IMG/VR virus record: IMGVR_UViG_3300049217_000071
Span: 186,001 to 250,000 of that record
Length of the DNA stretch: 64,000 bases
Direction: 5' to 3' (one strand)
The stretch's first letter is position 1. Every line of letters starts with the position of its first letter. This document shows positions 5,425-30,015 of the stretch, piece by piece. The position numbers and the translations under genes were made by a program. The notes beneath the pieces were generated by a model. That model searched no databases and had not been told where the DNA came from. It saw only the letters and a list, made by a program, of their open reading frames with translations.

Positions 5425-5443
5425 TCGGATATATAAGTAAGAG

Positions 5444-5983
5444 ATGATAATCACTAATAACGAAGACCTTCTACGAGTCAAATGTGATCCCGTCACTTCA
5501 GACGAAGTTGGGGCTCTAATAGAGACCTTAGAGAAGGAACTAGAATATGCTAATCGTTTGGGAAAGGGCGGCATTGGTTTGGCAGCTTCGCAGATTGGTC
5601 TTGCCAAAGACATTGCCATCGTGCGTCTTCCCAAAGTTAGCTTCAATCTGGTCAATGCCAGGTTAGAAAAAGGATTTGATCAGGCCCTCTTTACAGAGGA
5701 AGGTTGCCTCTCATTCCCTGGTCGTGTAGAGGACACTCTCCGATTTCAGGAAGTATACATCGTCAACAATCTGGTGGAGCCCCATACCTTGGTGGCTACC
5801 GGATTGGTAGCAGTGGTGTGTCAGCACGAATTAGATCATTGCAACTCTACCCTTTTTATGGATCGTGCCGCCCCTAAACTGGAGGTGGACGCGCCCCTTG
5901 TTCGTTCTACTGTCAAAGTAGGCCCCAACGAAAAATGCCCCTGCAACTCGGGCAAAAAATACAAGAGATGTTGCGGAAGGTAA
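5444..5983 (+). CDS. def: Peptide deformylase with C-terminal SEC-C motif
   Basis: GIGLAASQ, EGCLS, QHELDH; KVGPNEKCPCNSGKKYKRCC. Confidence 0.95.
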   Translation: MIITNNEDLLRVKCDPVTSDEVGALIETLEKELEYANRLGKGGIGLAASQIGLAKDIAIVRLPKVSFNLVNARLEKGFDQALFTEEGCLSFPGRVEDTLRFQEVYIVNNLVEPHTLVATGLVAVVCQHELDHCNSTLFMDRAAPKLEVDAPLVRSTVKVGPNEKCPCNSGKKYKRCCGR

Positions 5984-5985
5984 TT

Positions 5986-6228
5986 ATGACTGACAAGACC
6001 GGAAAGAAAAACATAACTAGTGATGTGATGTTGGCAGACCTAATGTTGCGCGTGACTTCTTTGGAATCCATACTTATTGCTAAAGGCATTTTTACCAAGG
6101 AAGAATTTTCTGCTGTCAATGAGGAAATTGCCAAGAAAGTTGCTAAGATTGTTTTAGAGCAAAATAAAACTCCTAAAGAAGCTGATGAGTTTATTGCTAA
6201 TTTCGAGGCCAATAAAGATAAGAACTAA
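5986..6228 (+). CDS. Hypothetical protein
   Basis: ATG at 5986 (MTDKTGK) just after the def stop. Confidence 0.55.
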   Translation: MTDKTGKKNITSDVMLADLMLRVTSLESILIAKGIFTKEEFSAVNEEIAKKVAKIVLEQNKTPKEADEFIANFEANKDKN

Positions 6229-6230
6229 TA

Positions 6231-6539
6231 ATGCTATTCATTACGCAGGAGGAAGAAATACAGATGAATACTCCTGTGCAAGCATTATATTTCTATGCAC
6301 CTTGGATGCCATTCCATCATAGATTTATGAAGTTGATTGATAATGTAGAAGGAAAACATAAGGAACTACATTTTTTTGCTATTGATGTAGATCAATTTGA
6401 TAGTCAGTGCAAGCGTTTTTCTATTGACTCCGTTCCGACCGTTCTAATTCTGAAAAATGGTAAGGAGGTCGATAGGATCGGTGGATTGGTTCTAACTGCT
6501 CCTTTCGAGCGCGCTTTTGCTGATATATGTGATCATTGA
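6231..6539 (+). CDS. Thioredoxin-fold protein lacking CxxC
   Basis: FYAPW(MPFH), IDVD, SVPTVLILKNGKEVDRIGG. Confidence 0.8.
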   Translation: MLFITQEEEIQMNTPVQALYFYAPWMPFHHRFMKLIDNVEGKHKELHFFAIDVDQFDSQCKRFSIDSVPTVLILKNGKEVDRIGGLVLTAPFERAFADICDH

Positions 6540-6560
6540 ATCGTATAAACGGAGAAACCT

Positions 6561-7028
6561 ATGCCTAAGAAGACCGCTAAGAAAACCAAGAAAAACACCA
6601 AGAGAATCGTGAAGAAAGCTGCCAAGAAGGCCACCAAGAAAGTGACTAAGAAGGTAGTTCGCAAGAGTAAGCCGACCGTGGTAGCAACCCCGCAAGTTGT
6701 GGTAGCACCTCCAGTTGTTGTAGAAACTCCTGTGGTTCCCGTAGCTCCACCTCCCCCTCCAGCGCCGGTGCCCGTTCCTATGTCTAATATGATTTGGAAC
6801 GAGATCGAAAATATGCCTCTGCAAATGTTTGGTTTGCCAGGACAAACTGTTGCAATGCATTGCACGCCAGTGCCTATTGAGCCTAGCAAGCTGTATGTGT
6901 CAATTCGATCTCAAGCCACTTTACCAGCTTTAGAGACGGCTTTGTCCGATAGATTCATAGTTGAAATGGTTGACAAGTGGGTAGCCATTGCACTCAAGCC
7001 GCAGCCTTTGACTCCGGCCAAGAGATAA
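6561..7028 (+). CDS. Hypothetical protein with Lys/Ala-rich histone-H1-like N-terminus and Pro-rich linker
   Basis: KKTAKKTKK..KKAAKKATKK; GGAGA SD. Confidence 0.65.
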   Translation: MPKKTAKKTKKNTKRIVKKAAKKATKKVTKKVVRKSKPTVVATPQVVVAPPVVVETPVVPVAPPPPPAPVPVPMSNMIWNEIENMPLQMFGLPGQTVAMHCTPVPIEPSKLYVSIRSQATLPALETALSDRFIVEMVDKWVAIALKPQPLTPAKR

Positions 7029-7043
7029 TCCCATTGAGGTTGT

Positions 7044-7541
7044 ATGCCATTTGACGAGAAAAAAGAATATACCCCTAAGCAAACGCTGAAGCAAATGCCC
7101 GGCCAGAAGTCGATGTTTGATAACAAACCTCGCCCTCCGACCCAGCAAGAATTTCAGCAGCAGGTGCAAGAATCTCAAGATCAAGTGGCCGGCTATAAGA
7201 AGCGTGCAGCTGAATTGTTTATGCAGTTCAACAAACTAATGGCTGATAAGACGATTCCACGGAATAAGAATATTTTAAATATGGAAACAGAAAAAGAGTT
7301 GATTGGGAATATGGTCAAACTAGCCCAAGCAATGAACCGGGATCCCAATGAACAAGAGGGAGACGGAACTCTTACTTGGGTGATCGCCCTTCTTACTACT
7401 ACGTTGAGACAGCGTGATAGAATCAATGAATTAGAATACTCTCTCAGCTCATTGCAGAAAAAATTGGAATCAACCGCTTTTACTGACTACATAAACAAAG
7501 AAATAAACAAAGCGCTTGACAAACGAAAATCCAATGAATAA
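7044..7541 (+). CDS. Hypothetical coiled-coil protein
   Basis: GAGG SD, 165 aa. Confidence 0.6.
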   Translation: MPFDEKKEYTPKQTLKQMPGQKSMFDNKPRPPTQQEFQQQVQESQDQVAGYKKRAAELFMQFNKLMADKTIPRNKNILNMETEKELIGNMVKLAQAMNRDPNEQEGDGTLTWVIALLTTTLRQRDRINELEYSLSSLQKKLESTAFTDYINKEINKALDKRKSNE

Positions 7542-7611
7542 GTTGGCATTTGTGGGAGTTTAGTATGCTCCACAACTATTTTCTGATTATCAATTTTTGG
7601 GAAATGCAAGC

Positions 7612-7791
7612 ATGACGCCCAAGGAACTACTTCTGTCTTTAGTTGCGGAAGAGAAAGAGCGTTATGGGGAGTATTCGCAATTATGTGCCCTCTATCAAGT
7701 CCAACCAGACCCGTTAGTAACGGCGAGACATCTTGGGAAACTGGAGATCCTACAGCTTCTGTTGCGGGAGAAAACTCTTATCAAGACATAA
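7612..7791 (+). CDS. Hypothetical small protein
   Basis: MTPKELLL.. ORF overlapping the next gene; start uncertain. Confidence 0.4.
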   Translation: MTPKELLLSLVAEEKERYGEYSQLCALYQVQPDPLVTARHLGKLEILQLLLREKTLIKT

Positions 7792-8303
7792 CTAATTTAG
7801 CCGACTCGGTTCCTCTAGAATTTGTCTTGCGTCATTACGGCATAGCCATCAGTCCTCATGCCAACATTACTTGTCCTTTCAAGTCGCATAAGGGCGGTCG
7901 AGAGAGCACCGGCTCTTTTAGATTCTATCCAGATCGCAATGCTTACAAATGTTATGGTTGCGGATCTTATGGTCATACCTGTAGCTTTGTGGCCATTATG
8001 GATAAGTGTAGCAGGCACGCCGCTGCTACTAAGATTTTGCGATTGTTTGGTTCGGACGCAGATCCCGATAAGATTCCAGATACCATCAACTCGCCAGAGC
8101 GATTAGAAATAATGATGGACTTTTCCAATACTGTTAGGGATTTCCGCCAGGCGTACACGGACGCTAAATCACAAGAGTTTATAGAGTTCGTATGTCGGGT
8201 ATATGATCGACACAACCTGAAGCATAAGAACCTCGATAATGAGGCTTTGCGCCGCCTGGTTGAGACGATCAAAGAGAAAATCACTCTACACACCCCACAA
8301 TAA
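7683..8303 (+). CDS. CHC2 zinc-finger protein (DnaG zinc-binding-domain-like)
   Basis: CPFKSH..E.TGSF..YKCYGCG; start uncertain. Confidence 0.8.
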   Translation: MCPLSSPTRPVSNGETSWETGDPTASVAGENSYQDITNLADSVPLEFVLRHYGIAISPHANITCPFKSHKGGRESTGSFRFYPDRNAYKCYGCGSYGHTCSFVAIMDKCSRHAAATKILRLFGSDADPDKIPDTINSPERLEIMMDFSNTVRDFRQAYTDAKSQEFIEFVCRVYDRHNLKHKNLDNEALRRLVETIKEKITLHTPQ

Positions 8304-8309
8304 GGTTGA

Positions 8310-9503
8310 ATGCAAGCTATCATTCTAGGTGATCCACACGTAGGTAAAGGGCTGTCCATTGGCAAGTCTGGCATCGGGGCCACGCTCAATAGTCGCATTG
8401 TCGATCAACTCAATCTGTTGGATTGGACGCTGGAACGTGCCATTGAGTATCATGTGGATCACATTATCATCACAGGCGATGTTTTCGAGGATCCTAAGCC
8501 GCTGCCCTCACTCATCACACATTTTATAGCGTGGCTCAAGAAATGTCAAGTGTACGGTATTCATGTCCACATCGTGATGGGCAACCACGATGTCTTCCGC
8601 AATGGGTTCGTCTACAACTCTACGCTGGATATTATCAGCGAAGTGGATTTGGATAACGTAGATGTCTATAAGGACATCAACACCATTACGATTGGGACGA
8701 CCGCTTTTACATTGGTCCCTTATCGTGATAGAAAAGCTTTTAGTGTTCCATCTAACGCAGAAGCCATTGCGTTGGTGCGAGATAGCCTTGTCTACGAACT
8801 GGCCGCTATACCCATCACCTATCGCAAGGTATTGATAGGTCATTTAGCCATCGAGGGTTCTATCCCGGTGGGTGATGAAATTGATGATCTAACCAACGAA
8901 CTATTCTGCCCCCTGGATATGTTCCAAGGATACGATTATGTGTGGATGGGTCACGTCCATAAGCCACAGGTAATGCAGAAAGCTAATCCATACATTGCTC
9001 ATATCGGTAGTATGGATATCTCCAACTTTGGTGAGACCGACCACAAAAAGCATATCGTCATTTTCAACTGTGATGAAGATAATGGATGGATTGCCGAGGA
9101 TCTGCCGACTCGCCAGCTCAAGAAGGTGGCTATCACCGTCCCCAAAGACACGGAAGACACAACTGCTTACGTTCTGGATGAACTGAAGAAATTGGGCTCG
9201 GTGGACAAGGCCATCGTCAGAGTGGAGATCGGCCTGGGCGCTCCTGAGCTAACGTCGGTCAATAAATCTACTATTGAGAAGTATTTGTCTTCCCAAGGTG
9301 CCTTCAACATTACCGGCATTTCCGAATCCAGAAAATTGGCCCTCATCAAGAAGGACATCAATAACACTATCGATACTAAGATGGATGTGCCAGCCGCTAT
9401 CAAGACTTATGGTCAGACCTATGTGCCAGACAAAGAAAGACCAGCCTTCATTGAGTTGGCTATGGAGATTCATAATCTCTATAAGATGGAGGGTAAAGAA
9501 TGA
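8310..9503 (+). CDS. sbcD: SbcD/Mre11-like nuclease
   Basis: GDPHVG, TGDVFE, GNHD, GHL, MGHVHK. Confidence 0.9.
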   Translation: MQAIILGDPHVGKGLSIGKSGIGATLNSRIVDQLNLLDWTLERAIEYHVDHIIITGDVFEDPKPLPSLITHFIAWLKKCQVYGIHVHIVMGNHDVFRNGFVYNSTLDIISEVDLDNVDVYKDINTITIGTTAFTLVPYRDRKAFSVPSNAEAIALVRDSLVYELAAIPITYRKVLIGHLAIEGSIPVGDEIDDLTNELFCPLDMFQGYDYVWMGHVHKPQVMQKANPYIAHIGSMDISNFGETDHKKHIVIFNCDEDNGWIAEDLPTRQLKKVAITVPKDTEDTTAYVLDELKKLGSVDKAIVRVEIGLGAPELTSVNKSTIEKYLSSQGAFNITGISESRKLALIKKDINNTIDTKMDVPAAIKTYGQTYVPDKERPAFIELAMEIHNLYKMEGKE

Positions 9504-11707
9504 ACCCTTTGAGACTATACATTGAAGGCTTTATGTGTTATGACTGGGCCTATATTGACTTCTCCCAATTTAGTTCTGCTTTGATAGTGGGCAAGATTGA
9601 GGGTAATGACGCTGACTCTAATGGCGCTGGTAAGACTACCATTTTCAAGGCTATCGAATATGTCTTGTTCAATCAATCAGACTTCAATTTGGAAAGAATT
9701 GTTCGAGATGATTGTGCTTCCTGTAAGATAGTTTTTGATTTTGTCATCGGCACACAGGAGTATAGGCTTGCACGCACACGTACGCGCAAAGGTGCAACGG
9801 ATCTTTCTCTCTACGAAAGAAATGGCGTGGATGGTTCTACTGAAGAAGTTTTGCATACGGACAAGTATCAAGCATTGTTTGATGAGAAATACTGGAAGGA
9901 CATTTCTGGTAGACGCACTACTGATACCGAGAAAGATTTAGCTAAACTGTTGAAGATCAATCTCAAGTCTTTCCGAATCTTCGTTCACTTCATCCAAAAC
10001 GATTTTGTCGGTTTGGCCACTGCTACCCCCGAAAAACGCAAGGGTATTCTCAAAGACGCCCTCAATTTGGCTGTGTATGCTAAGTTAGAGAAGATAGCTA
10101 AAGACAAGTGCAGCTTACTTAGTAAAGAGGCAGAAAAAATCCGCCTCCTTATCGATGGCGTAGGAGATCCTGATTTAGCTCTTACTGATTTAGTTCTTCA
10201 ACTATCTAATGTGGAAGTGGGTATCGAGGCGAGCACTACGCACGTAGCGCGTTTGGAAGAATTTCTGGTTGGAAGAAATGAAGACCTGAACAAACTAACC
10301 AACGAATACTCTAACCTGGAAAGCCGATTCTCTAATCTGATTGCTAAAGAGAAAGCACTAACTGCTGAAAAATCTAGACTAGAGATTTCTGTCAAGGAAT
10401 ACACCTCTAAGAAAGCTAATGTCGTCAAAGCTGCCCGTGATTTAGTGGCCGAGATGAAGCAACTGGAAGAGACCCGGAAGCAGTTAGTAGAGATCGATTT
10501 CAACCAAATTGACATCTTGTCGGAGCTGATTATCACCAACAAAGAAAGAGCCGCTCAACTCAGCCTTACTATCCAAACTGATACGGTCCGCTATGAGAAA
10601 CTCAAGAAGCCTATCCCCAAAGATGGTGAGTGCGAGGAATGTCGTCAGCCCATCACATCCGAACATAGGAAAATCTGCCAGGCCAAGCTGGACCAAGAGC
10701 GCACGGAGCGTCAGCAGAATATTCAGACTTGTAAGAAAGAAATTGGTGTATTGACCACGCAGAACGGGTTGCACCAACAGACCATCAATACTCTAACTTT
10801 GTCTAAGCAGCATTTGGAAGGGGTCAACGTCAAGATTGCTTCCAAGAAGAAAGAGCATGCGGATAAGCGTGAAACTCATGACGAATACAAAACCCTGTTG
10901 GATAAATTCACAACTGAACTAGAAGCTAAAAACACTGAGATTGAGAAGGTTAATGAGGATTTACAGAGTTCCTATACAGAGGTAGCAACGGCTCTCAATG
11001 AAAAAATTCAAGAGGCCAAACAGAAAGTGTCTCGCGATAGTGCGAGTTTGTTGGCAGCCAATAAAGAGCTGACGCAGTTCATCAGTAGTAAAGCGGTTAT
11101 TCAACATAGTATCAATCAAAAGACAGAAGATAAGCGTAAAAAGCTGGATTATGGTAAGCTCCTCAAAGAATTGGAGGACAAGCTCAGCGTGTATCCTTCA
11201 ATTTTGCAAGCCTTTTCTAGCACCGGTATTCCCAATCTAATCATCCATAATATCTTAGACGACCTTCAGTTAGAAGTCAATACGCTACTGAATCAATTCA
11301 AACCAGGATTGCAATTGACTTTTACTATCGAAAAAACTAAGGGAGATGGCACGGAAGCTGATACGCTGGACATAGATTACAAACTCAATGGTAAAGATCG
11401 ATACTATGAACAGCTATCTGGGGCTATGAGGTTGATTGTCAATTTCAGTCTAAAGTTGGGGCTATCCTTTCTCCTACAAAAGATGTTAGGCGTAGATATC
11501 AAGTTCTTACTGTTGGATGAACTGGATCAATCTCTGGACAAGTCGAGAGCAGATGCTTTTGCCGATATCATCAGGTTCTTGCATAAGGACTTCAATATCT
11601 TAGTAGTCACTCACAATGACCGTCTCAAGGATAAGTTTTCGCACGCCGTTCTGGTGGAGCAGGATATAAATATGGTATCGCATGCGCAACTGGTTTCTTC
11701 TTGGTAA
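9500..11707 (+). CDS. sbcC: SbcC/Rad50-like ATPase
   Basis: NGAGKTT, coiled coil with CEEC hook, LSGA signature, LLLDE, VTH. Confidence 0.92.
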   Translation: MNPLRLYIEGFMCYDWAYIDFSQFSSALIVGKIEGNDADSNGAGKTTIFKAIEYVLFNQSDFNLERIVRDDCASCKIVFDFVIGTQEYRLARTRTRKGATDLSLYERNGVDGSTEEVLHTDKYQALFDEKYWKDISGRRTTDTEKDLAKLLKINLKSFRIFVHFIQNDFVGLATATPEKRKGILKDALNLAVYAKLEKIAKDKCSLLSKEAEKIRLLIDGVGDPDLALTDLVLQLSNVEVGIEASTTHVARLEEFLVGRNEDLNKLTNEYSNLESRFSNLIAKEKALTAEKSRLEISVKEYTSKKANVVKAARDLVAEMKQLEETRKQLVEIDFNQIDILSELIITNKERAAQLSLTIQTDTVRYEKLKKPIPKDGECEECRQPITSEHRKICQAKLDQERTERQQNIQTCKKEIGVLTTQNGLHQQTINTLTLSKQHLEGVNVKIASKKKEHADKRETHDEYKTLLDKFTTELEAKNTEIEKVNEDLQSSYTEVATALNEKIQEAKQKVSRDSASLLAANKELTQFISSKAVIQHSINQKTEDKRKKLDYGKLLKELEDKLSVYPSILQAFSSTGIPNLIIHNILDDLQLEVNTLLNQFKPGLQLTFTIEKTKGDGTEADTLDIDYKLNGKDRYYEQLSGAMRLIVNFSLKLGLSFLLQKMLGVDIKFLLLDELDQSLDKSRADAFADIIRFLHKDFNILVVTHNDRLKDKFSHAVLVEQDINMVSHAQLVSSW

Positions 11708-11718
11708 GAGGTTAGAGA

Positions 11719-12315
11719 ATGTATAAGGTAGCAATTTCCGGCTTAGCCAATACGGGGAAGAACACCCTCAGCAAGATGATCGTCAAGCAGCTTCGCACAC
11801 GGAAGAAGGAATTGTATTATGTCAAGTATATGGCTTTTGCCGATCCCATCAAGAAGATGGTGCAGATTATGTTTCCCAATCTGCCCAAGAAGTTTCTTTA
11901 CGGCTCTTCCAAGTATCGCAACGAAATCGTTCCCGATGCTTTCAAGGATGGTAAACCCTTGACGGTGCGCCAACTCCTATGTGATCTAGGAACCTCGGTA
12001 GGTCGAGGTTATCAAGACGCTATCTGGCTCAACAATTTTGATGCCCGTTTTGAAGCAGAAACTAAGTGGAAGCAGATGGTGCTCGTAACTGACACTAGAT
12101 TCCGTAATGAGTTCGAGCATCTCAAGCAAAAAGGTTTCTATCAAGTGCGACTCTACCGAGAAACAGACGCCCCCAAGGTAGCTCACATAAGTGAAACCAA
12201 TCAGGGCGAAATCAAAGACCAAGAGTTCGACTATGTCATTCATAATGATAAAGGGTTGCACGATCTCAAAAGAGAGGTGCAAGATAACATCATACCGTAT
12301 TTGAAAAGTAAGTGA
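11719..12315 (+). CDS. Deoxynucleoside monophosphate kinase (T4 gp1-like)
   Basis: GLANTGK, FADPIK, RQLL..LGT, DTRFRNE. Confidence 0.8.
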   Translation: MYKVAISGLANTGKNTLSKMIVKQLRTRKKELYYVKYMAFADPIKKMVQIMFPNLPKKFLYGSSKYRNEIVPDAFKDGKPLTVRQLLCDLGTSVGRGYQDAIWLNNFDARFEAETKWKQMVLVTDTRFRNEFEHLKQKGFYQVRLYRETDAPKVAHISETNQGEIKDQEFDYVIHNDKGLHDLKREVQDNIIPYLKSK

Positions 12316-12339
12316 TGTATATTTCGGTATATATTCATC

Positions 12340-12654
12340 ATGAGCGTAGAAGCGCTAAAGGAAAAATTCGTCCCACAATATATGGCTACCGGCGAGCCTA
12401 AGTTCTATCGCCTTCTGCTTCTCATTGCTCTCAACAAATTAGTATGCATTAGCAAGGGCACCTATAAAGGAACGTCTCCAGAAGTAGAGTTTTTAGACTA
12501 TTATGATCAGTTCATAATCTTGTATAGGAGAGAAGGAGAGGAAGTTTATTTGGATTTAGCTCGCGTCTTTCGTCGAGCCGGTCATAAAATCTACCGCATT
12601 ATGCTCAAGAAAAAAATGACTGAGCGCAATCCAAGATTCCTCAATCTGGTATAA
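12340..12654 (+). CDS. Hypothetical protein
   Basis: 104-aa ORF in operon context. Confidence 0.55.
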   Translation: MSVEALKEKFVPQYMATGEPKFYRLLLLIALNKLVCISKGTYKGTSPEVEFLDYYDQFIILYRREGEEVYLDLARVFRRAGHKIYRIMLKKKMTERNPRFLNLV

Positions 12655-12655
12655 A

Positions 12656-13684: not shown

Positions 13685-13737
13685 TTGACAATATTTGTCC
13701 GATATATAGCTATTACACATTAAACGAAAAGATTATT

Positions 13738-14526: not shown

Positions 14527-14532
14527 GGAATT

Positions 14533-15777
14533 ATGCAAATCGAAATTACCGAAGTAGAACCTTGTAAGCTGGTCGTTCATTATGAAGCTAACTTCCTAGA
14601 GATTTCTGACAAGCGAATGGAAGTTCAGAATGCTTTCAAGAAGGCGCCAGTTTCTGGTTTTAGACCCGGACACGCCTCTATGGATGCCATCAAGATGACC
14701 TATGGCAAGCAGATTGACGAAGCGCTCAAGCGTGCTTTGGCAGAAGATGCTTATCATAACACACTCTTCGAGAAGAAGCTCCGCCCACATGGCGCCCCTC
14801 GCTTCAACAATCTACTCTTGGATGGTGGCAAGTTCGTCTGTGAGTTCGAGCTATACACCAAGCCAGAGTTTGAATTGGCTGATTGGAAGGGAATGGAGAT
14901 CCCACAACCGCATCAAACTATGAATGCCAATATGGTTTTGGAGCAGATGCTGCAAGAAATGCGAACCAAGCTGGGAACGGCAGAACCTTACGGTGAAACC
15001 GATTTCGTCCAAAACGGAGACAGCATCATCGTGGATTACGAAGCTTCTATTGATGGAGTCAAGATCGACAATTTGAGCGTAGCTGGCGAGATGATGGTGG
15101 TCGGACAAAATCCTCTCAAGGGATTTGATGACAACTTTTTGGGAATGATTTCGGGTGAAACTCGTGAGTTTGATTTCGATGCTCCTGAAGGTGGCTTACC
15201 ATCTGTCTCTGGCAAGAGAGTTCACTTCAAGGTAACCGTAGCCACGGGTGCCAAGAATATTCCGTGTCCGTTGGATGATGAGTTGGCCAAGAAACTTGGT
15301 AAGAAAGATTATGCCGAGCTATTGGATCATGTTTCTCAAGCCGCCGCAATGCGTGTAGAAACCAACAAGAAGACACTTCTTCACGCAGCCATCGGTAATA
15401 AGATGGTGGCCGATACCAAAATTGCGGTCCCCAACTGGATGACTCTGTCAGAGGCGCAGTATTTGGCCGCTAATGCTCAGATGGATTGGAATGTTATGCA
15501 AGACACTGACAAAGAAAAGATGTTGCAGATGGCAGAAGGAAATGTCAAGCTAACCCTCATCTTGGATAAAGTTAGGGAATTAGAGCCTGCCGCTCAGTTG
15601 ACCGACCAGGAAGTGTTTGGGATTATCAAACACAACTTAGCTCAAAGCCAACAGGGCAATTTAGACGAAGTGATTCAGAATATGAATCGCACAGGTCAAT
15701 TACAGATTATGTTCTCTCGTATTAGGGACGTCAACGCTTTGGATTGCATTTCTAAACAGATCAAAGTAATCGAATAA
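14533..15777 (+). CDS. tig: Trigger factor
   Basis: GFRPGH ribosome-binding signature, FKBP-like middle domain (GFDDNFLGM), LDDELAK; 414 aa. Confidence 0.85.
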   Translation: MQIEITEVEPCKLVVHYEANFLEISDKRMEVQNAFKKAPVSGFRPGHASMDAIKMTYGKQIDEALKRALAEDAYHNTLFEKKLRPHGAPRFNNLLLDGGKFVCEFELYTKPEFELADWKGMEIPQPHQTMNANMVLEQMLQEMRTKLGTAEPYGETDFVQNGDSIIVDYEASIDGVKIDNLSVAGEMMVVGQNPLKGFDDNFLGMISGETREFDFDAPEGGLPSVSGKRVHFKVTVATGAKNIPCPLDDELAKKLGKKDYAELLDHVSQAAAMRVETNKKTLLHAAIGNKMVADTKIAVPNWMTLSEAQYLAANAQMDWNVMQDTDKEKMLQMAEGNVKLTLILDKVRELEPAAQLTDQEVFGIIKHNLAQSQQGNLDEVIQNMNRTGQLQIMFSRIRDVNALDCISKQIKVIE

Positions 15778-15790
15778 CAGGAGAAGATCA

Positions 15791-16102
15791 ATGAGCAAAG
15801 ATGATAAAGACACGGGGCCCGCTATTCTCCCCGAAAAGTGGTTCAAGGTTATTGAGAAGATGCCAGAGTTCAAGGAAACGGCAGATGCTGCCAGCGTAGA
15901 GGATCTCAAAAAGATCATTGTCTCTTGCGAAGGCAACCTGCACGACCTAGCCAAAGAAGAGGCCGCTAACACCAAGCTGTCTAGCGCTAAGGCCATTGCT
16001 AAAGATGAGTCCTTGCAATATAGGGAGGGTCGAAAGGCACAAAATGCCAAGATTCAGTACGCCCTCTTTCTTTTGGAAAGTAAGGGAGTCGATCTCGGAT
16101 GA
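15791..16102 (+). CDS. Hypothetical protein
   Basis: AGGAG SD. Confidence 0.6.
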   Translation: MSKDDKDTGPAILPEKWFKVIEKMPEFKETADAASVEDLKKIIVSCEGNLHDLAKEEAANTKLSSAKAIAKDESLQYREGRKAQNAKIQYALFLLESKGVDLG

Positions 16103-16377
16103 AAGTTGAAAGGTTTGTTATACAAGCCTGCTGTAATAAAAAGGCGATCGTCTTCAAGATTGACCGCCCCATAGGTATGTCTCTACTCCAATTTTTGACA
16201 AGTAACGGGTTTACATTAGCTGATCACTTCACCAAGGCAGGGATGCTGTATGCCGATAATTCGGCCTTAATAATAACAGGTCCCATCGGTTCTGATAAGA
16301 TCAATGCCAAGTGCAAGAAACCCGAGTGCGACCAAATCTTCAATGATTTCGAGGCATTGCTTGTCAAAATGGGGTGA
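16099..16377 (+). CDS. Hypothetical protein
   Basis: ATGA coupling. Confidence 0.55.
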   Translation: MKVERFVIQACCNKKAIVFKIDRPIGMSLLQFLTSNGFTLADHFTKAGMLYADNSALIITGPIGSDKINAKCKKPECDQIFNDFEALLVKMG

Positions 16378-16973
16378 GAATGGTCAAAGAGGCCGAAATA
16401 CACGAGTTGATATCGACGGCCTATCACGAGGCAGGTCATACGGTGTATGCCTTGCTCAATTTTATGAAGGTTGATTTGGTCTCTATTATTAGACCCAAGG
16501 GAAGCAAAAGAATAGGCGAAACTTGCTATTCTCATCCTGCTAACCTTAACTCTGTTAAGAGTGCAAAGCTTTTTCGTATGCTCTCTGAAATAGAGTTAGG
16601 GGTATGTTATGCGGGCGAAGAAGTCGAAAAGATGTTATTCAAGTCTCTTTCCGGCTCTGATCAAGTGCCTCAGTTTATCAAAGATGGTGCCAGCGGCGAT
16701 ATAAAGAGAGCAACGAATTTCATTAGGAAGTATAATCTGTTGCCTCTCGGCAAAAATAAGAAGAGGAGTAATTTCAAGAAGAGATTGTCGAAAAAAATTC
16801 AAGGCGAGCTAAACAATAATTGGGATGCCATTACGTTGATAGCTCATAGCTTGTATCATCACCGCAAGCTGACTTTCGACGATCTACAAAAGCTGCTCAC
16901 TACCAAAACACGCAACAAGAAGTTTTGGAAGAGTCAGTTCAAGAAGATGATCGCTTTTTATAGCGTGCCTTGA
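16374..16973 (+). CDS. Stand-alone peptidase M41 (FtsH protease domain)-like protein
   Basis: TAYHEAGH, YAGEEVE, GASGDIKRAT; no AAA or TM domain. Confidence 0.75.
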   Translation: MRMVKEAEIHELISTAYHEAGHTVYALLNFMKVDLVSIIRPKGSKRIGETCYSHPANLNSVKSAKLFRMLSEIELGVCYAGEEVEKMLFKSLSGSDQVPQFIKDGASGDIKRATNFIRKYNLLPLGKNKKRSNFKKRLSKKIQGELNNNWDAITLIAHSLYHHRKLTFDDLQKLLTTKTRNKKFWKSQFKKMIAFYSVP

Positions 16974-17104
16974 TAGCGTGATATTTACACCGTATTCCCT
17001 AACACTCACATACGCAGTCTACATATATTAGACTGAAAACGCCCCTCAGATGCGGGTTAGATATGTAATTGCTGTTATAATACCCAACCCATATCGGAGG
17101 TCTT

Positions 17105-20626: not shown

Positions 20627-20767
20627 TATATATGATAAGAATCGACACAGAAAATAACAAATAATAACAAAACCTACTAATAGTTGGTCATTTCGATATG
20701 CACGATGTCAAAAAGTGTTATATATGTGATGACACCAGGCTCTCTGGGAAATGATAAGAAAGTATTT

Positions 20768-22338: not shown

Positions 22339-22339
22339 T

Positions 22340-23509: not shown

Positions 23510-23511
23510 TT

Positions 23512-23970: not shown

Positions 23971-23971
23971 T

Positions 23972-24799: not shown

Positions 24800-24820
24800 T
24801 TTTCAGAAAGAGTAAGTGCA

Positions 24821-25111: not shown

Positions 25112-25179
25112 GCGCGTTCATTAGTTTATTTTGTCGAGATAAAGTTCGTTATATTACGTATTACAGAAAGAAGACAGAC

Positions 25180-26903: not shown

Positions 26904-26905
26904 TA

Positions 26906-27621: not shown

Positions 27622-27708
27622 TGTGATGAATAGATTACGATCGATGTTTGTTAAGTAGATAGTAAACGTACCTTTGTGTACAATAGAAAATAACAGTTAG
27701 GAGATCAT

Positions 27709-28416
27709 ATGACTACATTCGGTGAAATTAATTGGAGTGATGACGTTTTTGGTGGCCAAGATGGCAAAAAGAACACCAACTCTAAGGACCTGTTCCTTAG
27801 ACTAGATGAAGGCCCAAACGAGGTGAGACTGATTACTCAGCCTTTCCAGTATTTGGTCCACAAGTACAAGAAGGCTGATGACACTGGCTTCGGTCAGAAG
27901 GTCCCATGCTCCGCTATCCACGGAAGCTGCCCGCTCTGTGCTATGGGCGACAAGGCCAAGCCACGTTGGTTGCTCGGTGTAATTAGCCGCAAGACCAACA
28001 CCTACAAGATCTTGGACATTTCTTTCGCTGTTTTCGGACAGATCAGAAAGTACGCTAAGAACGCTGCTCGTTTTGGTGATCCAACCAAGTACGATATCAA
28101 CATTGAGGTGGATAAGAACGGTGGAGCCACTGGCTACTACTCAGTTCAAGCGCTCAATAAAGAAGCTCTTTCCGCTACGGATCAAGACATCAAAGACAAA
28201 GTTGACTTCGATGATTTGAAGCGTAGGGTCACTCCTCCAACTCCTGACATCGTTCAGAAGAGAATGGATAAGATTGACGGCGTTGCTACCCCAGCAACCG
28301 GAACTGCCCCAGCTTCGGCTGCCAAGAAAGCTGCGCCTAAGGCTGCAACCCCTCCAGTTAGCATGACTGATGAAGAGACTTTAGATGAGTCCTTCCCCGC
28401 TCATGATGCATCATAA
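27709..28416 (+). CDS. Single-stranded DNA-binding protein (gp32-like)
   Basis: H..C..CPLC Zn site, DPTKYDINI, acidic C-terminal tail, AGGAG SD. Confidence 0.7.
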   Translation: MTTFGEINWSDDVFGGQDGKKNTNSKDLFLRLDEGPNEVRLITQPFQYLVHKYKKADDTGFGQKVPCSAIHGSCPLCAMGDKAKPRWLLGVISRKTNTYKILDISFAVFGQIRKYAKNAARFGDPTKYDINIEVDKNGGATGYYSVQALNKEALSATDQDIKDKVDFDDLKRRVTPPTPDIVQKRMDKIDGVATPATGTAPASAAKKAAPKAATPPVSMTDEETLDESFPAHDAS

Positions 28417-28438
28417 TCTAAGTTCCCCTTAGAGAACA

Positions 28439-28472
28439 AAAAGGTCCAAGGCTCCCCCGCTTTGGTCCTTTT
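28439..28472 (+). terminator. Intrinsic terminator-like hairpin
   Basis: AAAAGGTCCAAGGC...GCTTTGGTCCTTTT after the SSB gene. Confidence 0.6.
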
Positions 28473-28482
28473 CTATTTACAC

Positions 28483-28490
28483 TGATATAT
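28483..28490 (+). promoter_or_regulatory. Representative of candidate promoter motif A, (T/C)G(A/T)TATAT
   Basis: Also at 4763, 5427 (GGATATAT), 6521, 13700, 20624, 20716, 25147, 31168, 31708, 45857, 59289, 60081 and 43932(-). Confidence 0.65.
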
Positions 28491-28498
28491 TACTTGGT

Positions 28499-29059
28499 AT
28501 GTCCAAGATTATATTAGGGTTTGACGTTTCCAGTACCACCATCGGTTGGTGCGTTTTGAGTCTCGATGAGAAAAACAATATCTCTTTTGTCAAAGCAGAT
28601 TATGTGAAGCCAGTCAAGAAAGGCTCTATTATTGAGAGAATAGTAGATACCAGAGATAAAATCCAAAAAATCATTGACGAAGTCAAGCCAGACTATATTG
28701 GTATCGAAGATATCATCAAGTTTATGGCAGGGAAGAGTAGCGCTCAAACCATCATAATGCTAACTACATTCAATCGAATGATTGGATTATGTGCTTATGA
28801 TTATCTACATAGGTCTCCTGAATTGTTTAGTGTTATGACCATCAGACACGGACTCAAACTGGATAATGTCTTTCCAAAAAAAGAAGATATGCCCGCTCTT
28901 GTCTCGCAACGTTTAGGAATTATATTCCCTTACCAGCTCGGAAAAAAGGGCGCTCTCAAAGTGGAGAACTATGATATGGCGGACGGTATTGCCGTAGCGT
29001 TATATTATGCATTGGTTCTGACCGGGCAAACCAAGGTCAAGCGCAAGGGTAAGAAATGA
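28499..29059 (+). CDS. RuvC-like Holliday junction resolvase
   Basis: ILGFDVSSTTIGW, IGIED, DMADGIAVA. Confidence 0.8.
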   Translation: MSKIILGFDVSSTTIGWCVLSLDEKNNISFVKADYVKPVKKGSIIERIVDTRDKIQKIIDEVKPDYIGIEDIIKFMAGKSSAQTIIMLTTFNRMIGLCAYDYLHRSPELFSVMTIRHGLKLDNVFPKKEDMPALVSQRLGIIFPYQLGKKGALKVENYDMADGIAVALYYALVLTGQTKVKRKGKK

Positions 29060-30015
29060 ATCTCAAGGAAGCCTACGCAACTCTAGAACTTGCCGAGGGT
29101 GATACCCCGGAAGAGGCTAAGAAACAATACCGCAAGTTGACCAAGAAATATCATCCAGATGTTAGCAAAGAAAAAGATGCGGATGAGAAGATCAAGAAGA
29201 TCAATGAAGCCTATGAGTGTGTCAAGAATGGCAAAGGCAATGATCGCGAACCCGCTATGCAGCGTGGTAATGGGAGGTATAACCCTTTCCATAGACAACA
29301 AGTTGTGCAAATAGAGAATGTAGAGCTGCATCTAAGTATTGATTTCAAGGAATCCGTTTTAGGTTGTAAGAAAGAGGTCAAGTATTCTCGCAAAACCAAG
29401 TGTCAAAGCTGCGATGGATCTGGAGAGGTTGTTCTCAACAATGGATGTAAGAAATGTGGTGGTCGTGGTCAAGTAACCAGTCAGAGAAGTGGCATGATCT
29501 TTATGCAAACTTGTCCCGAGTGTTTTGGCAAGACCCACGTAACCGAGTGTACGGTTTGTCACGCGCAGGGGCTCACACAGACGGACGTGTCTGTGCAGGT
29601 GTCCGTACCTGCGGGCATAACTGATAAAGCCGTTTTGCGTTTGCAGGGTATGGGTAACTATGCTGGTTCGCTGATGGGATTTGTAGATCAGTATGCGGAT
29701 GTCTTTTGCCATGTCAATGTAGCTTCAGAGCCGGGCCTTCGTATAGAGGGTAAAAGCGTAGTAACGGATCTCAGTATCTCTTTGTTAGACGCTTTGCGCG
29801 GCTGTGAACGACAGGTCAAGACCATTTTTGGTACCAAGGGTATTACCATAAAGCCACATTCTAGAAACCATGACGAGGTGATTATTCCCCATCATGGAGT
29901 GGGTGGAACGGGAGATCAAAAGGTCATTCTGGACGTCCAATACCCCAAGAACGTAGATAAACTGATTGCTCTTTTAGCAGATGAGGTGAACCATGGCTTT
30001 GGCTCTGTACTGTAA
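29056..30015 (+). CDS. dnaJ: DnaJ co-chaperone
   Basis: J domain with HPD, four CxxCxxxG/K repeats, C-terminal domain. Confidence 0.92.
   Translation: MNLKEAYATLELAEGDTPEEAKKQYRKLTKKYHPDVSKEKDADEKIKKINEAYECVKNGKGNDREPAMQRGNGRYNPFHRQQVVQIENVELHLSIDFKESVLGCKKEVKYSRKTKCQSCDGSGEVVLNNGCKKCGGRGQVTSQRSGMIFMQTCPECFGKTHVTECTVCHAQGLTQTDVSVQVSVPAGITDKAVLRLQGMGNYAGSLMGFVDQYADVFCHVNVASEPGLRIEGKSVVTDLSISLLDALRGCERQVKTIFGTKGITIKPHSRNHDEVIIPHHGVGGTGDQKVILDVQYPKNVDKLIALLADEVNHGFGSVL

What the first reader, a model, noticed from the sequence alone, without database searches (positions are those of the whole stretch)
5444..30015. Phage-encoded nascent-chain processing and proteostasis kit
Seen: peptide deformylase (5444), full-length trigger factor (14533), DnaJ (29056), a Trx-fold protein (6231) and a stand-alone M41 peptidase domain (16374). 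Known: PDF and trigger factor act at the ribosomal exit tunnel. Phage PDFs are known; to my knowledge, phage trigger factor is much less described. Inference: the phage replaces or supplements host exit-tunnel factors.
Basis: partly seen in the sequence, partly recalled or inferred. Interest (0 to 1): 0.6.

Follow-up and report, generated by a model that had tools for sequence, protein, structure and literature searches.

The report
Huge-phage nascent-protein maturation gene set
A roughly 430-kb environmental phage, and its whole lineage, carries its own intact trigger factor, a peptide deformylase fused to a SecA-type ribosome/SecB-binding zinc knuckle, a DnaJ co-chaperone and a bare FtsH-type protease domain, so it probably brings its own machinery for maturing newly made proteins on host ribosomes.

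Summary
All five genes are at the stated coordinates and are intact. The window lies in a 268-kb IMG/VR phage record (about 62% complete) with terminase and portal genes on the same strand.

The genes are neither recent host captures nor an assembly artefact. TF, PDF, the M41 domain and DnaJ occur in 23 of 23 related viral records (contigs up to 511 kb). Synteny is identical, catalytic and docking motifs are conserved, and purifying selection matches the core replication genes. No GTDB species genome carries this TF.

- The "Trx-fold protein" has no CXXC anywhere in the clade, so it is redox-dead.
- The genes are not one cassette. They are scattered through a replication/recombination block.
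It also includes bS21 and a YjoB-like AAA+ just upstream, two ClpP genes, GroES, 53 tRNAs and a tmRNA. Near-complete relatives add a type I methionine aminopeptidase.
- DnaK, GrpE, GroEL, SecB, SRP and Fmt are absent.

New point: the PDF's usual C-terminal helix is replaced by a SecA-like metal-binding domain. This fusion is widespread in metagenomic PDFs and I found it undescribed.

Function is inferred from sequence only. No expression or binding data exist.

The parts
5444..5983 (+). Peptide deformylase (type 1B-like core, residues 1-145) followed by a ~15-residue Pro/Lys linker and a C-terminal SecA-type metal-binding domain (residues ~157-179, KVGPNEKCPCNSGKKYKRCCGR)
   Evidence: PF01327 E=1.3e-24 and PF02810 E=1.3e-7. 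All three catalytic motifs are present. Motifs and the CxCx8(15)C[CH] tail are conserved in 22 clade sequences. Found in 23/23 viral records. Closest solved structures are Synechococcus PDF 4dr8 and Vibrio phage VP16T PDF 5mtc, which align only to residue ~135-153.
5912..5980 (+). SEC-C / SecA-like metal-binding domain sub-feature of the PDF gene
   Evidence: PF02810 covers residues 162-179. Several NCBIfam models also match the C-terminal tail: YchJ family (NF002486), a SWIM/SEC-C metal-binding-motif protein (TIGR04102) and several 'hypothetical protein' models. The Ser and Tyr that are conserved in the SecA MBD are kept.
6231..6539 (+). Thioredoxin-fold protein without a CXXC active site (W-M-P-x-H instead). 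Conserved neighbour of the PDF; its role is unknown and it is probably not a redox enzyme.
   Evidence: PF00085 E=2e-9. The W[MV]PxH motif holds across 26 clade sequences, none with CXXC. pN/pS is 0.41.
14533..15777 (+). Full-length three-domain trigger factor: N-terminal ribosome-binding domain with GFRPGHAS, an FKBP-like middle domain and a C-terminal arm domain
   Evidence: TIGR00115 scores 191.3 bits against a cut-off of 180.2. Pfam Trigger_N and Trigger_C hit. GFR[PE]G[KH] is conserved in 34/34 sequences. AF2 model pLDDT is 83.5; Foldseek finds E. coli TF 1w26 at 1.5e-21 and 2vrh at TMq 0.64, the N-domain at TMt 0.81 and FKBP at TMt 0.78. More than 120 clusters lie at 60-97% identity. Present in 33/33 loci.
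15791..16102 (+). Conserved 103-aa protein of unknown function between TF and M41, predicted helical
   Evidence: Present in 33/33 loci with median 59% identity and pN/pS 0.31. No Pfam or PHROG hit. The Atlas gave no usable feature hit.
16099..16377 (+). Conserved 92-aa Cys-containing protein of unknown function. It overlaps both neighbours by 4 nt, which suggests translational coupling of TF-o103-o92-M41.
   Evidence: Present in 33/33 loci. CC...KCK...C residues are conserved. The nearest Atlas clusters are viral hypothetical proteins.
16374..16973 (+). Stand-alone FtsH-type (M41) zinc-metallopeptidase domain, with no AAA+ module and no membrane anchor
   Evidence: PF01434 scores 30.9 bits against a cut-off of 29.9. 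It aligns to E. coli FtsH 409-502 with HEAGH and GASxD. HEAGH is invariant and the Asp is conserved in 34 sequences. AF2 gives pLDDT 93 and pTM 0.90. Foldseek's 17 matches at E<=0.001, and nearly all of the 50 listed, are FtsH/YME1/AFG3L2/FtsHi at probability 1.00. Found in 23/23 records.
29056..30015 (+). Type I-like DnaJ co-chaperone: J domain with HPD, a very short G/F linker, four Cys-pair zinc-finger repeats and a DnaJ C-terminal domain. It overlaps the upstream RuvC gene by 4 nt.
   Evidence: PF00226 E=4.1e-14, PF01556 E=2.6e-22, PF00684 E=3.1e-6. HPD and the four Cys pairs are conserved in 15 clade sequences. Found in 23/23 records. There is no HSP70 in 0/23 and no GrpE in 0/5. The RuvC-DnaJ-Zn-ribbon-primase order is conserved in 14/14.

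Best explanation
The window is part of a huge tailed phage, about 430 kb by CheckV's completeness estimate; near-complete relatives are 361-481 kb. It comes from moss, lake and soil metagenomes.

The lineage has long carried its own ATP-independent layer of the bacterial protein-maturation network. It is encoded in and around the replication/recombination block, alongside DNA replication genes.

Inferred mechanism:
1. Host ribosomes, possibly modified by the phage bS21 encoded 2.6 kb upstream of the window, translate phage mRNAs.
2. The phage trigger factor docks at the exit port through its conserved GFRxG loop and shields nascent phage proteins.
3. The phage PDF removes the N-formyl group. 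It lacks the usual ribosome-binding C-terminal helix. Instead it is probably tethered to the ribosome (or to SecB where one exists) by a SecA-type zinc-binding domain on a flexible linker.
4. In complete genomes, a phage type I methionine aminopeptidase then removes Met.
5. Downstream, the phage supplies co-factors and peptidases that plug into host ATP-driven machines it does not encode: DnaJ for host DnaK, GroES for host GroEL, and two ClpP subunits. It also supplies a bare FtsH-type Zn-protease domain for clipping or clearing unfolded chains.

The net effect would be to sustain and bias folding capacity toward the large phage proteome during a long infection. That means supplementing the host factors, not necessarily replacing them.

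Shown here: gene identity, intact motifs, folds, clade-wide conservation and selection, and the absence of the ATPase partners.
Inferred: ribosome docking, the MBD tether, the use of host DnaK/GroEL, the timing of expression, and the benefit to the phage.
For: Identity and intactness.

Phage context: an IMG/VR virus record of 268,344 bp at 62% completeness. Coding density is 91%, nearly all on one strand, with the standard code. TerL, portal and a head-protease domain are in the same window.

Vertical inheritance:
- Identical synteny on a 511-kb ENA contig and on others at 61-67% TF identity.
- 32 IMG/VR loci.
- In 23/23 records: DnaJ, PDF, M41 and bS21.
- Median amino-acid identities (TF 58, PDF 64, M41 45) bracket those of core genes (PolIIIa 78, Mre11 70, Rad50 56).
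- pS is saturated at about 0.75, with pN/pS of 0.31-0.45, like Mre11, Rad50 and the nuclease.
- Functional motifs are conserved clade-wide.
- No GTDB species genome has this TF. There is no DNA match in GenBank phages.

Exit-site completeness: type I MetAP scores above the TIGR00500 cut-off in 4/4 genomes that are at least 90% complete. It always lies about 140-150 kb past TF, beyond the end of this contig.

MBD as a tether: the SecA MBD binds SecB and ribosomes, and many bacterial MetAPs carry such an MBD (bioRxiv 10.1101/613315). SecB is absent from the phage.

Co-factor pattern: GroES is present without GroEL. DnaJ is present without DnaK or GrpE. Two ClpP genes are present without a clear Clp ATPase.

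Large translation toolkit: 53 tRNAs plus a tmRNA.
Against: - There is no expression, ribosome-binding or activity evidence. No RNA run holds this sequence.
- The genes are not a cassette. They are interleaved with nucleases, Mre11/Rad50, Pol III alpha, RecA, RuvC and primase, so co-function is inferred only from shared biology.
- DnaJ is locked between RuvC and primase in 14/14 relatives, which fits a replication role at least as well.
- PDF and DnaJ score below the NCBIfam equivalog cut-offs (85 vs 104 bits; 181 vs 377 bits), so they are divergent.
- TF is only about 21% identical to E. coli TF over the structural superposition, so docking on the unknown host's uL23 is assumed.
- The MBD could bind something other than ribosomes.
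- MetAP is not in the DNA held for this particular genome.
- The promoter and terminator scan gave nothing above shuffled sequence, so the transcription units are unknown.
Confidence: 0.6

Rival explanations
1. The genes are separate accessories with unrelated jobs, tied to the replication block they sit in. DnaJ would recruit host DnaK to remodel the phage replisome or helicase-loader complexes, as lambda needs DnaJ/DnaK. The CXXC-less Trx-fold protein would be a structural polymerase or nuclease accessory, as T7 uses thioredoxin non-redox. TF would act post-translationally as an assembly chaperone for large phage complexes, and M41 would be a specific processing protease. On this view there is no coordinated 'exit-tunnel kit'.
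For: All five genes are embedded among Mre11/Rad50, dNMP kinase, a Cas4-like nuclease, Pol III alpha, RecA, RuvC and primase. The RuvC-DnaJ-Zn-ribbon-primase order and the 4-nt overlap are conserved in 14/14 relatives. The Trx-fold protein lacks CXXC clade-wide. The lambda and T7 precedents rest on established knowledge and were not tested here.
Against: TF keeps the ribosome-docking signature in 34/34 sequences. PDF and MetAP have no known role other than N-terminal processing of nascent chains. The PDF carries a ribosome/SecB-binding type MBD. bS21, tmRNA and 53 tRNAs show a clade-wide investment in translation. Gene order in phage early regions is a weak guide to function.
Confidence: 0.22
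2. The set is mainly counter-defence or host takeover. Phage copies of TF, PDF, DnaJ and ClpP would decoy, titrate or bypass host immunity and stress circuits that monitor or use these factors. Examples would be DnaJ-dependent sensors, chaperone-addicted toxin-antitoxin systems, or host shut-off of def/tig.
For: A 2025 paper on other large phages raises this possibility for phage DnaJ/DnaK and cites DnaJ-dependent bNACHT25 sensing and SecB-dependent antitoxins (PMC12619734). Phage RB43's J-protein acts on host sigma32 through DnaK (cited there). A restriction-modification pair and methyltransferases flank the block.
Against: Catalytic and docking motifs are kept under purifying selection like housekeeping enzymes, which a decoy would not need. 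No defence or anti-defence domain was detected in these proteins. No padloc scan was run and no host is known, so this is essentially untested.
Confidence: 0.08
3. The genes are recent host captures, degenerate passengers, or the product of a chimeric or misbinned bacterial contig.
For: IMG/VR labels four related records 'provirus'. One family member is named in NCBI as a Candidatus Saccharimonadales MAG protein. GenBank 'phage' records with TF-like genes are mostly unannotated fragments.
Against: The same genes appear in the same order in 23-33 independent viral contigs at 44-67% identity. Synonymous sites are saturated and pN/pS is low. Motifs are intact. TF is only about 21% identical to E. 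coli TF over the structural superposition. No GTDB species genome holds this TF family. TerL and portal lie on the same strand of the same contig, with even GC content.
Confidence: 0.02

Closest known systems
Bacterial trigger factor (E. coli Tig; PDB 1W26, 2VRH)
   Same: It has the same three-domain architecture, with an N-domain carrying the GFRxG ribosome-docking loop, an FKBP-like domain and a C-terminal arm domain. It scores above the TIGR00115 equivalog cut-off and superposes full-length.
   Different: It is encoded by a phage lineage and is about 21% identical to E. coli TF over the structural superposition. It barely clears the cut-off (191 vs 180 bits). The final Pro of the signature is often replaced (GFRPGHAS). 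No GTDB species genome has this subfamily. PHROGs holds only an unannotated TF-like family, phrog_26774.
Known phage peptide deformylases (cyanophage S-SSM7 PDF, PDB 3UWA; Vibrio phage VP16T PDF, PDB 5MTC) and the PDFs listed for huge phages (Al-Shayeb 2020, PMC7162821)
   Same: It has the same catalytic core and motifs, and like those phage PDFs it lacks the bacterial C-terminal helix. PDF is already recognised as a phage translation-related gene.
   Different: This PDF adds a flexible linker and a SecA-type metal-binding domain. No GenBank phage PDF aligns beyond residue ~148. The solved phage PDFs stop at about residue 135-141 of the query.
SecA C-terminal metal-binding domain, and MBD-bearing proteins (YecA, YchJ, MBD-containing methionine aminopeptidases)
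   Same: It has the CxCx8C[CH] motif with the conserved Ser and Tyr and a basic KKYKK patch. It sits at the C-terminus after a flexible linker. The precedent is a nascent-chain enzyme (MetAP) that carries such an MBD.
   Different: Here it is fused to PDF, and in phages. The binding partner is untested. The phage MetAPs of this clade have no MBD.
Phage J-domain proteins and co-chaperones (RB43 Rki; DnaJ/DnaK of 'moraphages', PMC12619734; T4 gp31 as a GroES analogue)
   Same: The phage supplies a co-chaperone that must work with a host ATP-driven chaperone: an HPD J-domain without DnaK, and GroES without GroEL.
   Different: This is a full type I-like DnaJ with a zinc finger and C-terminal domain, not a minimal J-protein. 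It has a truncated G/F region. Unlike some moraphages, this clade has no DnaK. It is fixed between RuvC and primase.
FtsH / m-AAA / i-AAA proteases (family M41)
   Same: It has the protease-domain fold, the HEXXH motif and the Asp third ligand.
   Different: It has no AAA+ module and no transmembrane segments, and it is only 199 aa. The nearby AAA+ protein is YjoB-like and lacks a pore-1 loop, so it is not an obvious trans partner. Stand-alone M41 domains of 158-217 aa already form several ESM Atlas clusters.
Translation-gene repertoires of huge phages (Al-Shayeb et al. 2020), including phage bS21
   Same: This is a huge genome with tens of tRNAs, a tmRNA, bS21 and PDF.
   Different: That paper does not mention trigger factor, chaperones, DnaJ or FtsH. 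Here TF, PDF and MetAP, the complete bacterial exit-site trio, are a conserved feature of the clade.

Membership tests
Trigger factor (TIGR00115; Pfam Trigger_N + FKBP_C + Trigger_C) | Whole-protein score above the curated equivalog cut-off | tested here: met
   191.3 bits against a cut-off of 180.2
Trigger factor (TIGR00115; Pfam Trigger_N + FKBP_C + Trigger_C) | N-terminal domain with the ribosome-docking signature GFRxGxxP | tested here: met
   GFRPGHAS in the window. GFR[PE]G[KH] is found in 34/34 clade sequences, though the final Pro is variable. The N-domain superposes on 1oms at TMt 0.81.
Trigger factor (TIGR00115; Pfam Trigger_N + FKBP_C + Trigger_C) | Central FKBP-type PPIase domain | tested here: met
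   The fold is present, with Foldseek FKBP hits at TMt 0.7-0.78. The Pfam FKBP_C hit is only weak (E=0.0014, below the cut-off). PPIase activity cannot be tested here.
Trigger factor (TIGR00115; Pfam Trigger_N + FKBP_C + Trigger_C) | Binds uL23 at the ribosomal exit port and chaperones nascent chains | not testable with these tools
   The host and its ribosome are unknown. This needs co-sedimentation or cryo-EM.
Peptide deformylase (PF01327 / TIGR00079) | Three catalytic motifs G[IL]GLAAxQ, EGCLS and QHExDH (Cys/His/His metal ligands plus the catalytic Glu) | tested here: met
   All are present in the window and conserved in 22 clade sequences, with one exception that reads QHEIGH.
Peptide deformylase (PF01327 / TIGR00079) | Score above the curated cut-off | tested here: inconclusive
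   The Pfam score of 87 bits exceeds the 22.8 cut-off. TIGR00079 gives 85 bits, below its equivalog cut-off of 103.95.
Peptide deformylase (PF01327 / TIGR00079) | C-terminal amphipathic helix that docks E. coli-type PDF on the ribosome | tested here: not met
   After ...HELDHCNSTLFMDR come a Pro-rich linker of about 15-20 residues and an MBD. Alignments to solved PDFs end at residue ~145-153.
SecA-type metal-binding domain (PF02810 SEC-C) | CxCx8C[CH] metal ligands with the conserved Ser and Tyr | tested here: met
   The motif is CPCNSGKKYKRCC, with PF02810 at 31.8 bits against a 20.4 cut-off. It is conserved clade-wide, and three members have a 7-residue insertion.
SecA-type metal-binding domain (PF02810 SEC-C) | Binds SecB and/or the ribosome | not testable with these tools
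   This property is reported for the SecA MBD. No SecB is found in the phage, and the host is unknown.
Type I (class A) DnaJ/Hsp40 (TIGR02349) | J domain with an HPD tripeptide | tested here: met
   KKYHPDVSK, with PF00226 at 52.9 bits against a 27.8 cut-off. HPD is invariant in 15 clade sequences.
Type I (class A) DnaJ/Hsp40 (TIGR02349) | Gly/Phe-rich region after the J domain | tested here: not met
   There is only a variable linker of about 25 residues with one conserved Phe.
Type I (class A) DnaJ/Hsp40 (TIGR02349) | Four CxxCxGxG zinc-finger repeats and the C-terminal substrate-binding/dimerisation domains | tested here: met
   Four Cys pairs are conserved. PF01556 scores 79.9 bits. PF00684 scores 27.8 bits, below its 32.7 cut-off.
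Type I (class A) DnaJ/Hsp40 (TIGR02349) | Equivalog score above the cut-off | tested here: not met
   181.3 bits against a cut-off of 377.2. It is a divergent DnaJ-like protein, not an orthologue-grade DnaJ.
FtsH ATP-dependent zinc metalloprotease (TIGR01241) | M41 protease domain with HEXXH and an Asp third ligand | tested here: met
FtsH ATP-dependent zinc metalloprotease (TIGR01241) | AAA+ ATPase module in the same polypeptide | tested here: not met
   The 199-aa protein begins at the protease domain. TIGR01241 matches profile positions 418-510 only (26 bits against a 600 cut-off).
FtsH ATP-dependent zinc metalloprotease (TIGR01241) | N-terminal transmembrane anchor | tested here: not met
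   The protein begins at the protease domain: residues 12-119 align to FtsH-family profile positions 418-510 and to E. coli FtsH 409-502, so there is no N-terminal region that could hold a membrane anchor. No transmembrane predictor was run.
Thioredoxin (PF00085 / TIGR01068) | Thioredoxin fold | tested here: met
   PF00085 scores 37.8 bits against a 23.5 cut-off.
Thioredoxin (PF00085 / TIGR01068) | WCGPC (CXXC) redox-active site | tested here: not met
   WMPFH is at that position. None of the 26 clade sequences has CXXC there. TIGR01068 gives 43 bits against a 96.8 cut-off.

The most novel reading that the evidence does not exclude
This huge-phage lineage builds a phage-specified maturation platform on host ribosomes. 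It would combine a phage bS21 on the 30S subunit with phage trigger factor, an MBD-tethered PDF and a phage MetAP at the 50S exit port. These would be coupled to host DnaK, GroEL and Clp ATPases through phage DnaJ, GroES and ClpP. In other words, the virus would encode the entire ATP-independent layer of bacterial proteostasis and use it to channel folding capacity to its own proteome. As a corollary, the SecA-type MBD would be a general, portable ribosome tether for nascent-chain enzymes, widely exploited by uncultivated phages. At least 117 of the 150 nearest PDF cluster representatives carry it.
Probability: 0.3. Interest if true: 0.8.

Novelty: new variant of a known kind. Interest (0 to 1): 0.62.

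Why it matters
Phage-encoded translation genes (tRNAs, bS21, PDF, initiation and elongation factors) are known, and so are isolated phage co-chaperones. A conserved, intact, full-length trigger factor in phages was not described in anything I could find. Together with PDF and MetAP it gives the complete bacterial set of ribosome exit-site factors.

If these proteins act on host ribosomes, viral control of translation would extend from initiation and decoding to co-translational maturation and folding.

The PDF-MBD fusion offers a clean, testable case for the proposal that SecA-like MBDs are ribosome tethers.

The pattern of encoding the co-factor and borrowing the ATPase motor (DnaJ, GroES, ClpP) gives a simple rule for how huge phages economise on proteostasis genes.

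The proteins are small, soluble and easy to test in E. coli tig, dnaK and def backgrounds.

Tried and rejected
- **Near-DNA search against GenBank phages:** no match. The first attempt failed on a length limit.
- **Single-sequence scan of IMG/VR with TF:** found nothing. The alignment-based scan worked.
- **GTDB genome scan for this TF family:** none found, so there is no host clue from integrated or misbinned copies.
- **Split-FtsH idea** (the upstream AAA+ acting in trans with the M41 domain): weakened. The AAA+ is closest to B. subtilis YjoB (7w42, E=8e-32) and has a gap where VAT/p97 carry the aromatic pore-1 loop. It lies 20 kb from M41, and a more distant relative (L036) lacks it at that position.
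- **Sigma-70 promoter and intrinsic terminator scan of 4400-17300:** 30 promoter-like sites against 23.8 +/- 4.0 in shuffles, and 13 terminator-like sites against 10.5 +/- 3.6. This is uninformative.
- **Expression:** no run on record as RNA holds the sequence.
- **Complex prediction:** not used. The relevant partners (host uL23, DnaK, SecB) are unknown, and I make no specific pairwise binding claim.
- **Small ORFs between TF and M41:** no family found by Pfam, PHROGs or the Atlas.
- **Phylogeny against bacterial TFs:** not done. The tools returned only clade members among the top hits and no named bacterial TFs. The evidence for antiquity is therefore divergence and saturation, not a rooted tree.
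- **Names for PDF-MBD representatives outside the clade:** none on record.
- **Failed scripts:** one search failed on a division by zero and was rerun. One search was an empty script.

Full report
**1. What is in the window**

The window is bases 186,001-250,000 of a 268,344-bp IMG/VR virus record that CheckV rates 62% complete. That implies a genome of roughly 430 kb. The genome uses the standard code, is about 91% coding and is almost entirely on one strand. Inside the window, downstream of the finding, lie a large terminase (43951-45828), a portal (45911-47824), a baseplate-hub/lytic-tail-like protein and a head-maturation-protease domain protein. GC content is even across the window. It is therefore a huge tailed phage and not a chimera.

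**2. The five claimed genes are real**

- **PDF (5444-5983).** It has all three catalytic motifs. Unexpectedly, it also has a C-terminal SEC-C motif (KCPCNSGKKYKRCCGR; PF02810 E=1.3e-7).
- **Trigger factor (14533-15777).** It scores above NCBI's equivalog cut-off (191 vs 180 bits) and carries the docking loop GFRPGHAS. An AF2 model (pLDDT 83.5) superposes full-length on E. coli TF, including the ribosome-bound form 2vrh. Its N-domain and FKBP domain also match separately.
- **DnaJ (29056-30015).** It has HPD, four Cys-pair repeats and the C-terminal domain, but only a stub of a G/F region.
- **M41 protein (16374-16973).** It is borderline in Pfam (30.9 vs 29.9 bits). It aligns to E. coli FtsH 409-502 with HEAGH and the Asp ligand. 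It folds with pLDDT 93 into a structure whose significant PDB neighbours (E<=0.001) are all FtsH, YME1, AFG3L2 or FtsHi protease domains. It has no AAA+ module and no membrane anchor.
- **Trx-fold protein (6231-6539).** It matches PF00085 but reads WMPFH where thioredoxins read WCGPC.

**3. Surroundings**

The five genes are not a cassette. They are scattered through a replication/recombination block. The block contains:
- an EcoRI-like nuclease plus a Dam-type methylase, and an HNH endonuclease;
- a DnaG zinc ribbon, and Mre11-like and Rad50-like proteins;
- a dNMP kinase and a Cas4-like PD-(D/E)XK nuclease;
- Pol III alpha, RecA, RuvC, a Toprim primase and a sigma-region-4-like protein.

TF, a 103-aa ORF, a 92-aa ORF and M41 are packed tightly. 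The two small ORFs and M41 overlap by 4 nt. DnaJ overlaps RuvC by 4 nt.

Just upstream of the window lie:
- two tandem ClpP genes (G000 172,588-173,747);
- an FtsK/HerA-type ATPase and topoisomerase IA;
- a classical AAA+ protein (181,652-183,043);
- a ribosomal protein bS21 homologue (183,006-183,428; PF01165 E=1.3e-13);
- an MT-A70 methylase.

Elsewhere in the genome there are a GroES (74,995-75,276), 53 tRNAs and a tmRNA.

**4. Relatives**

TF has more than 120 90%-identity clusters at 60-97% identity. Many sit on contigs of 340-511 kb. On a 511-kb ENA contig and on others, the order is identical at 61-67% TF identity:

HNH - PDF:SEC-C - Trx - primase Zn ribbon - Mre11 - Rad50 - dNMP kinase - nuclease - TF - two small ORFs - ~220-aa ORF - Pol III alpha - RecA

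An alignment-based scan of IMG/VR returned 32 loci (44-66% identity).

Tallies across 23 of these records, including four that are at least 90% complete (361-481 kb):

| Gene | Found in |
|---|---|
| DnaJ | 23/23 |
| PDF | 23/23 |
| M41 | 23/23 |
| bS21 | 23/23 |
| ClpP (tandem pair) | 21/23; the two misses are short fragments (11% and 22% complete) |
| HSP70 | 0/23 |
| GroEL, GrpE, SecB, SRP54, formyltransferase, SmpB | 0/5 each |
| Convincing Clp ATPase | none |

A Peptidase_M24 gene is present in all four near-complete genomes. In each it scores above the TIGR00500 cut-off as a type I methionine aminopeptidase (207-232 vs 171 bits). Across the 23 records it appears in the seven whose sequence reaches about 140-150 kb beyond TF (checked for six of them). 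The records checked among those that lack it (G000, G007, G013) end before that point.

**5. Selection**

In 33 loci, the median amino-acid identities to the window are TF 58%, PDF 64%, M41 45% and Trx-like 53%. For comparison, Pol III alpha is 78%, Mre11 70%, the nuclease 66% and Rad50 56%.

Synonymous sites are saturated (pS about 0.75). pN/pS is 0.31-0.45 for the kit genes and 0.20-0.39 for the core genes.

Functional residues are conserved across the clade:
- the PDF motifs and the MBD Cys ligands;
- TF GFR[PE]G[KH];
- M41 HEAGH and the Asp;
- DnaJ HPD and the Cys pairs.

The Trx-like protein never has CXXC.

No GTDB species genome encodes this TF family.

**6. The PDF-MBD fusion**

Solved PDFs, including the two phage enzymes (5mtc, 3uwa), align only up to residue ~135-153. 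Beyond the core, this PDF has a Pro-rich linker and the MBD in place of the E. coli-type C-terminal helix.

An exhaustive HMMER search of 1.84 billion representatives shows that the fusion is not rare. By a strict rule, 94 of the best 150 representatives end in a CxCx6-16C[CH] motif. By a looser rule, 117 of 150 do, and 112 of the 121 full-length ones do.

The ten that I looked up have no name and no NCBI source. One belongs to a more distant branch of the same lineage (L036). Another sits in a different large phage that has a tail tube, clamp loader and sliding clamp (L037). No GenBank phage PDF extends into an MBD.

A bioRxiv paper (10.1101/613315) states that the SecA MBD binds SecB and ribosomes. 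It also states that the methionine aminopeptidases of many bacteria carry a SecA-like MBD. That is a direct precedent for an MBD-tethered nascent-chain enzyme.

I found no paper on PDF:SEC-C fusions or on phage trigger factor. Al-Shayeb et al. 2020 list PDF among huge-phage translation genes but do not mention TF, chaperones, DnaJ or FtsH.

**7. Interpretation**

The most economical reading is that this lineage carries the ATP-independent layer of bacterial protein maturation. That layer comprises the exit-site trio (TF, PDF, MetAP), co-factors (DnaJ, GroES) and peptidases (two ClpP genes, an M41 domain). It leaves the ATP-driven machines (DnaK, GroEL, Clp/FtsH ATPases) to the host.

Together with bS21, a tmRNA and about 50 tRNAs, this fits a strategy of sustaining and biasing translation and folding toward a very large phage proteome.

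Shown: gene identities, folds, motif integrity, clade-wide conservation and selection, and partner absences.
Inferred: ribosome docking of TF, the MBD as a ribosome tether, the use of host DnaK and GroEL, expression timing, and fitness benefit.

Confidence in this reading is about 0.6.

**8. Rivals**

(a) The genes have unrelated jobs tied to the replication block (about 0.22). DnaJ is fixed between RuvC and a Zn-ribbon protein plus primase in 14/14 relatives. This fits a lambda-like use of DnaJ/DnaK in replisome remodelling. The Cys-less Trx-fold protein may be a structural accessory.

(b) Counter-defence or host takeover (about 0.08). This was raised in the literature for other phage DnaJs and is untested here.

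(c) Recent capture or chimera (about 0.02). This is rejected as described above.

**9. Ideas that did not hold**

The upstream AAA+ is not an obvious trans partner for the M41 domain. Its closest solved relative is B. subtilis YjoB, and it lacks the aromatic pore-1 loop. The promoter and terminator scans were at chance level. No RNA-seq run holds the sequence. Its DNA occurs in moss (the likely source), lake-water and soil metagenomes, so expression is untested.

**10. Verdict**

It is strengthened for TF and PDF, extended by MetAP and bS21, wrong for the Trx-like protein, and open for DnaJ and M41.
- Novelty: a new variant of a known kind, namely phage-encoded translation and proteostasis genes. 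The newly described elements are a conserved phage trigger factor, the complete exit-site trio, and a widespread PDF-MBD fusion.
- Interest: about 0.6.

Noticed in passing
G000 183006-183428 (2.6 kb upstream of window base 1; locus L035:11007-11429): A 140-aa ribosomal protein bS21 homologue with an N-terminal extension (PF01165 E=1.3e-13). It is present in 23/23 related viral records, always about 4 kb upstream of the PDF.
   Followed up: partly
G000 181652-183043 (L035:9653-11044): A conserved 463-aa classical-clade AAA+ protein with an N-terminal domain of about 230 aa of unknown function. Its closest solved relative is B. subtilis YjoB (7w42, E=8e-32). It has no aromatic pore-1 loop, and its Walker B region reads FEDLD.
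   Followed up: partly
G000 172588-173133 and 173223-173747 (L035:589-1748): Two tandem full-length ClpP paralogues (about 158 bits each), found in 21/23 clade records. No convincing Clp ATPase was found in the phage genomes.
   Followed up: partly
G000 74995-75276: A GroES/Cpn10 gene (E=3e-21), also present in 3 of the 4 near-complete relatives. No GroEL was found in any of them. This is a T4 gp31-like situation.
   Followed up: no
G000 32453-165047 (outside the window): ARAGORN finds 53 tRNA genes in several clusters and a tmRNA (157740-158091, tag ADEFAFAEAA). Two of the tRNAs have a CUA anticodon and are labelled tRNA-Pyl (161750-161822, 163289-163362). TAG ends only 22 of 372 crude ORFs. 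No SmpB was found. No recoding is claimed, because genes in the window read open under table 11.
   Followed up: no
window 153-1965: An EcoRI-like restriction endonuclease (PF02963 E=2.6e-18) overlaps a D12-class N6-adenine methyltransferase, which looks like a phage-borne type II R-M pair. An MT-A70 methylase lies just upstream (G000 185444-186040).
   Followed up: no
window 12656-13684: A 342-aa protein with Fn3_assoc and CHB_HEX_C_1 domains, which are typical of secreted glycoside-hydrolase accessory regions. It sits in the middle of the replication block and is conserved in 32/33 loci.
   Followed up: no
window 53149-56838: A 1229-aa protein whose residues ~105-213 match a head-maturation-protease family (phrog_18299). 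This is unusually large for a prohead protease.
   Followed up: no
L036:16283-16861 (JGI contig Ga0163151_10002148): A more distant relative carries an Acb1/2'-5' RNA ligase-like phosphodiesterase gene inside the same block, between Rad50 and the Fn3_assoc gene. It is a candidate anti-CBASS nuclease, and the window has no equivalent at that position.
   Followed up: no
IMG/VR records G003, G007, G014, G016: Four related records of 267-481 kb are classed as 'provirus' by IMG/VR, although they look like complete or near-complete lytic-type huge-phage genomes. This may be a host-boundary call misled by the many bacterial-like genes (TF, PDF, MetAP, ClpP, tRNAs).
   Followed up: no
GenBank phage records (e.g. 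OR844993.1, OR846597.1, CAKLQH020000005.1): Several deposited 'phage' records of Staphylococcus, Enterococcus, Listeria and Acinetobacter contain TF-like genes at 24-28% identity to this one. Some are annotated tig. They may be host contamination rather than phage genes.
   Followed up: no
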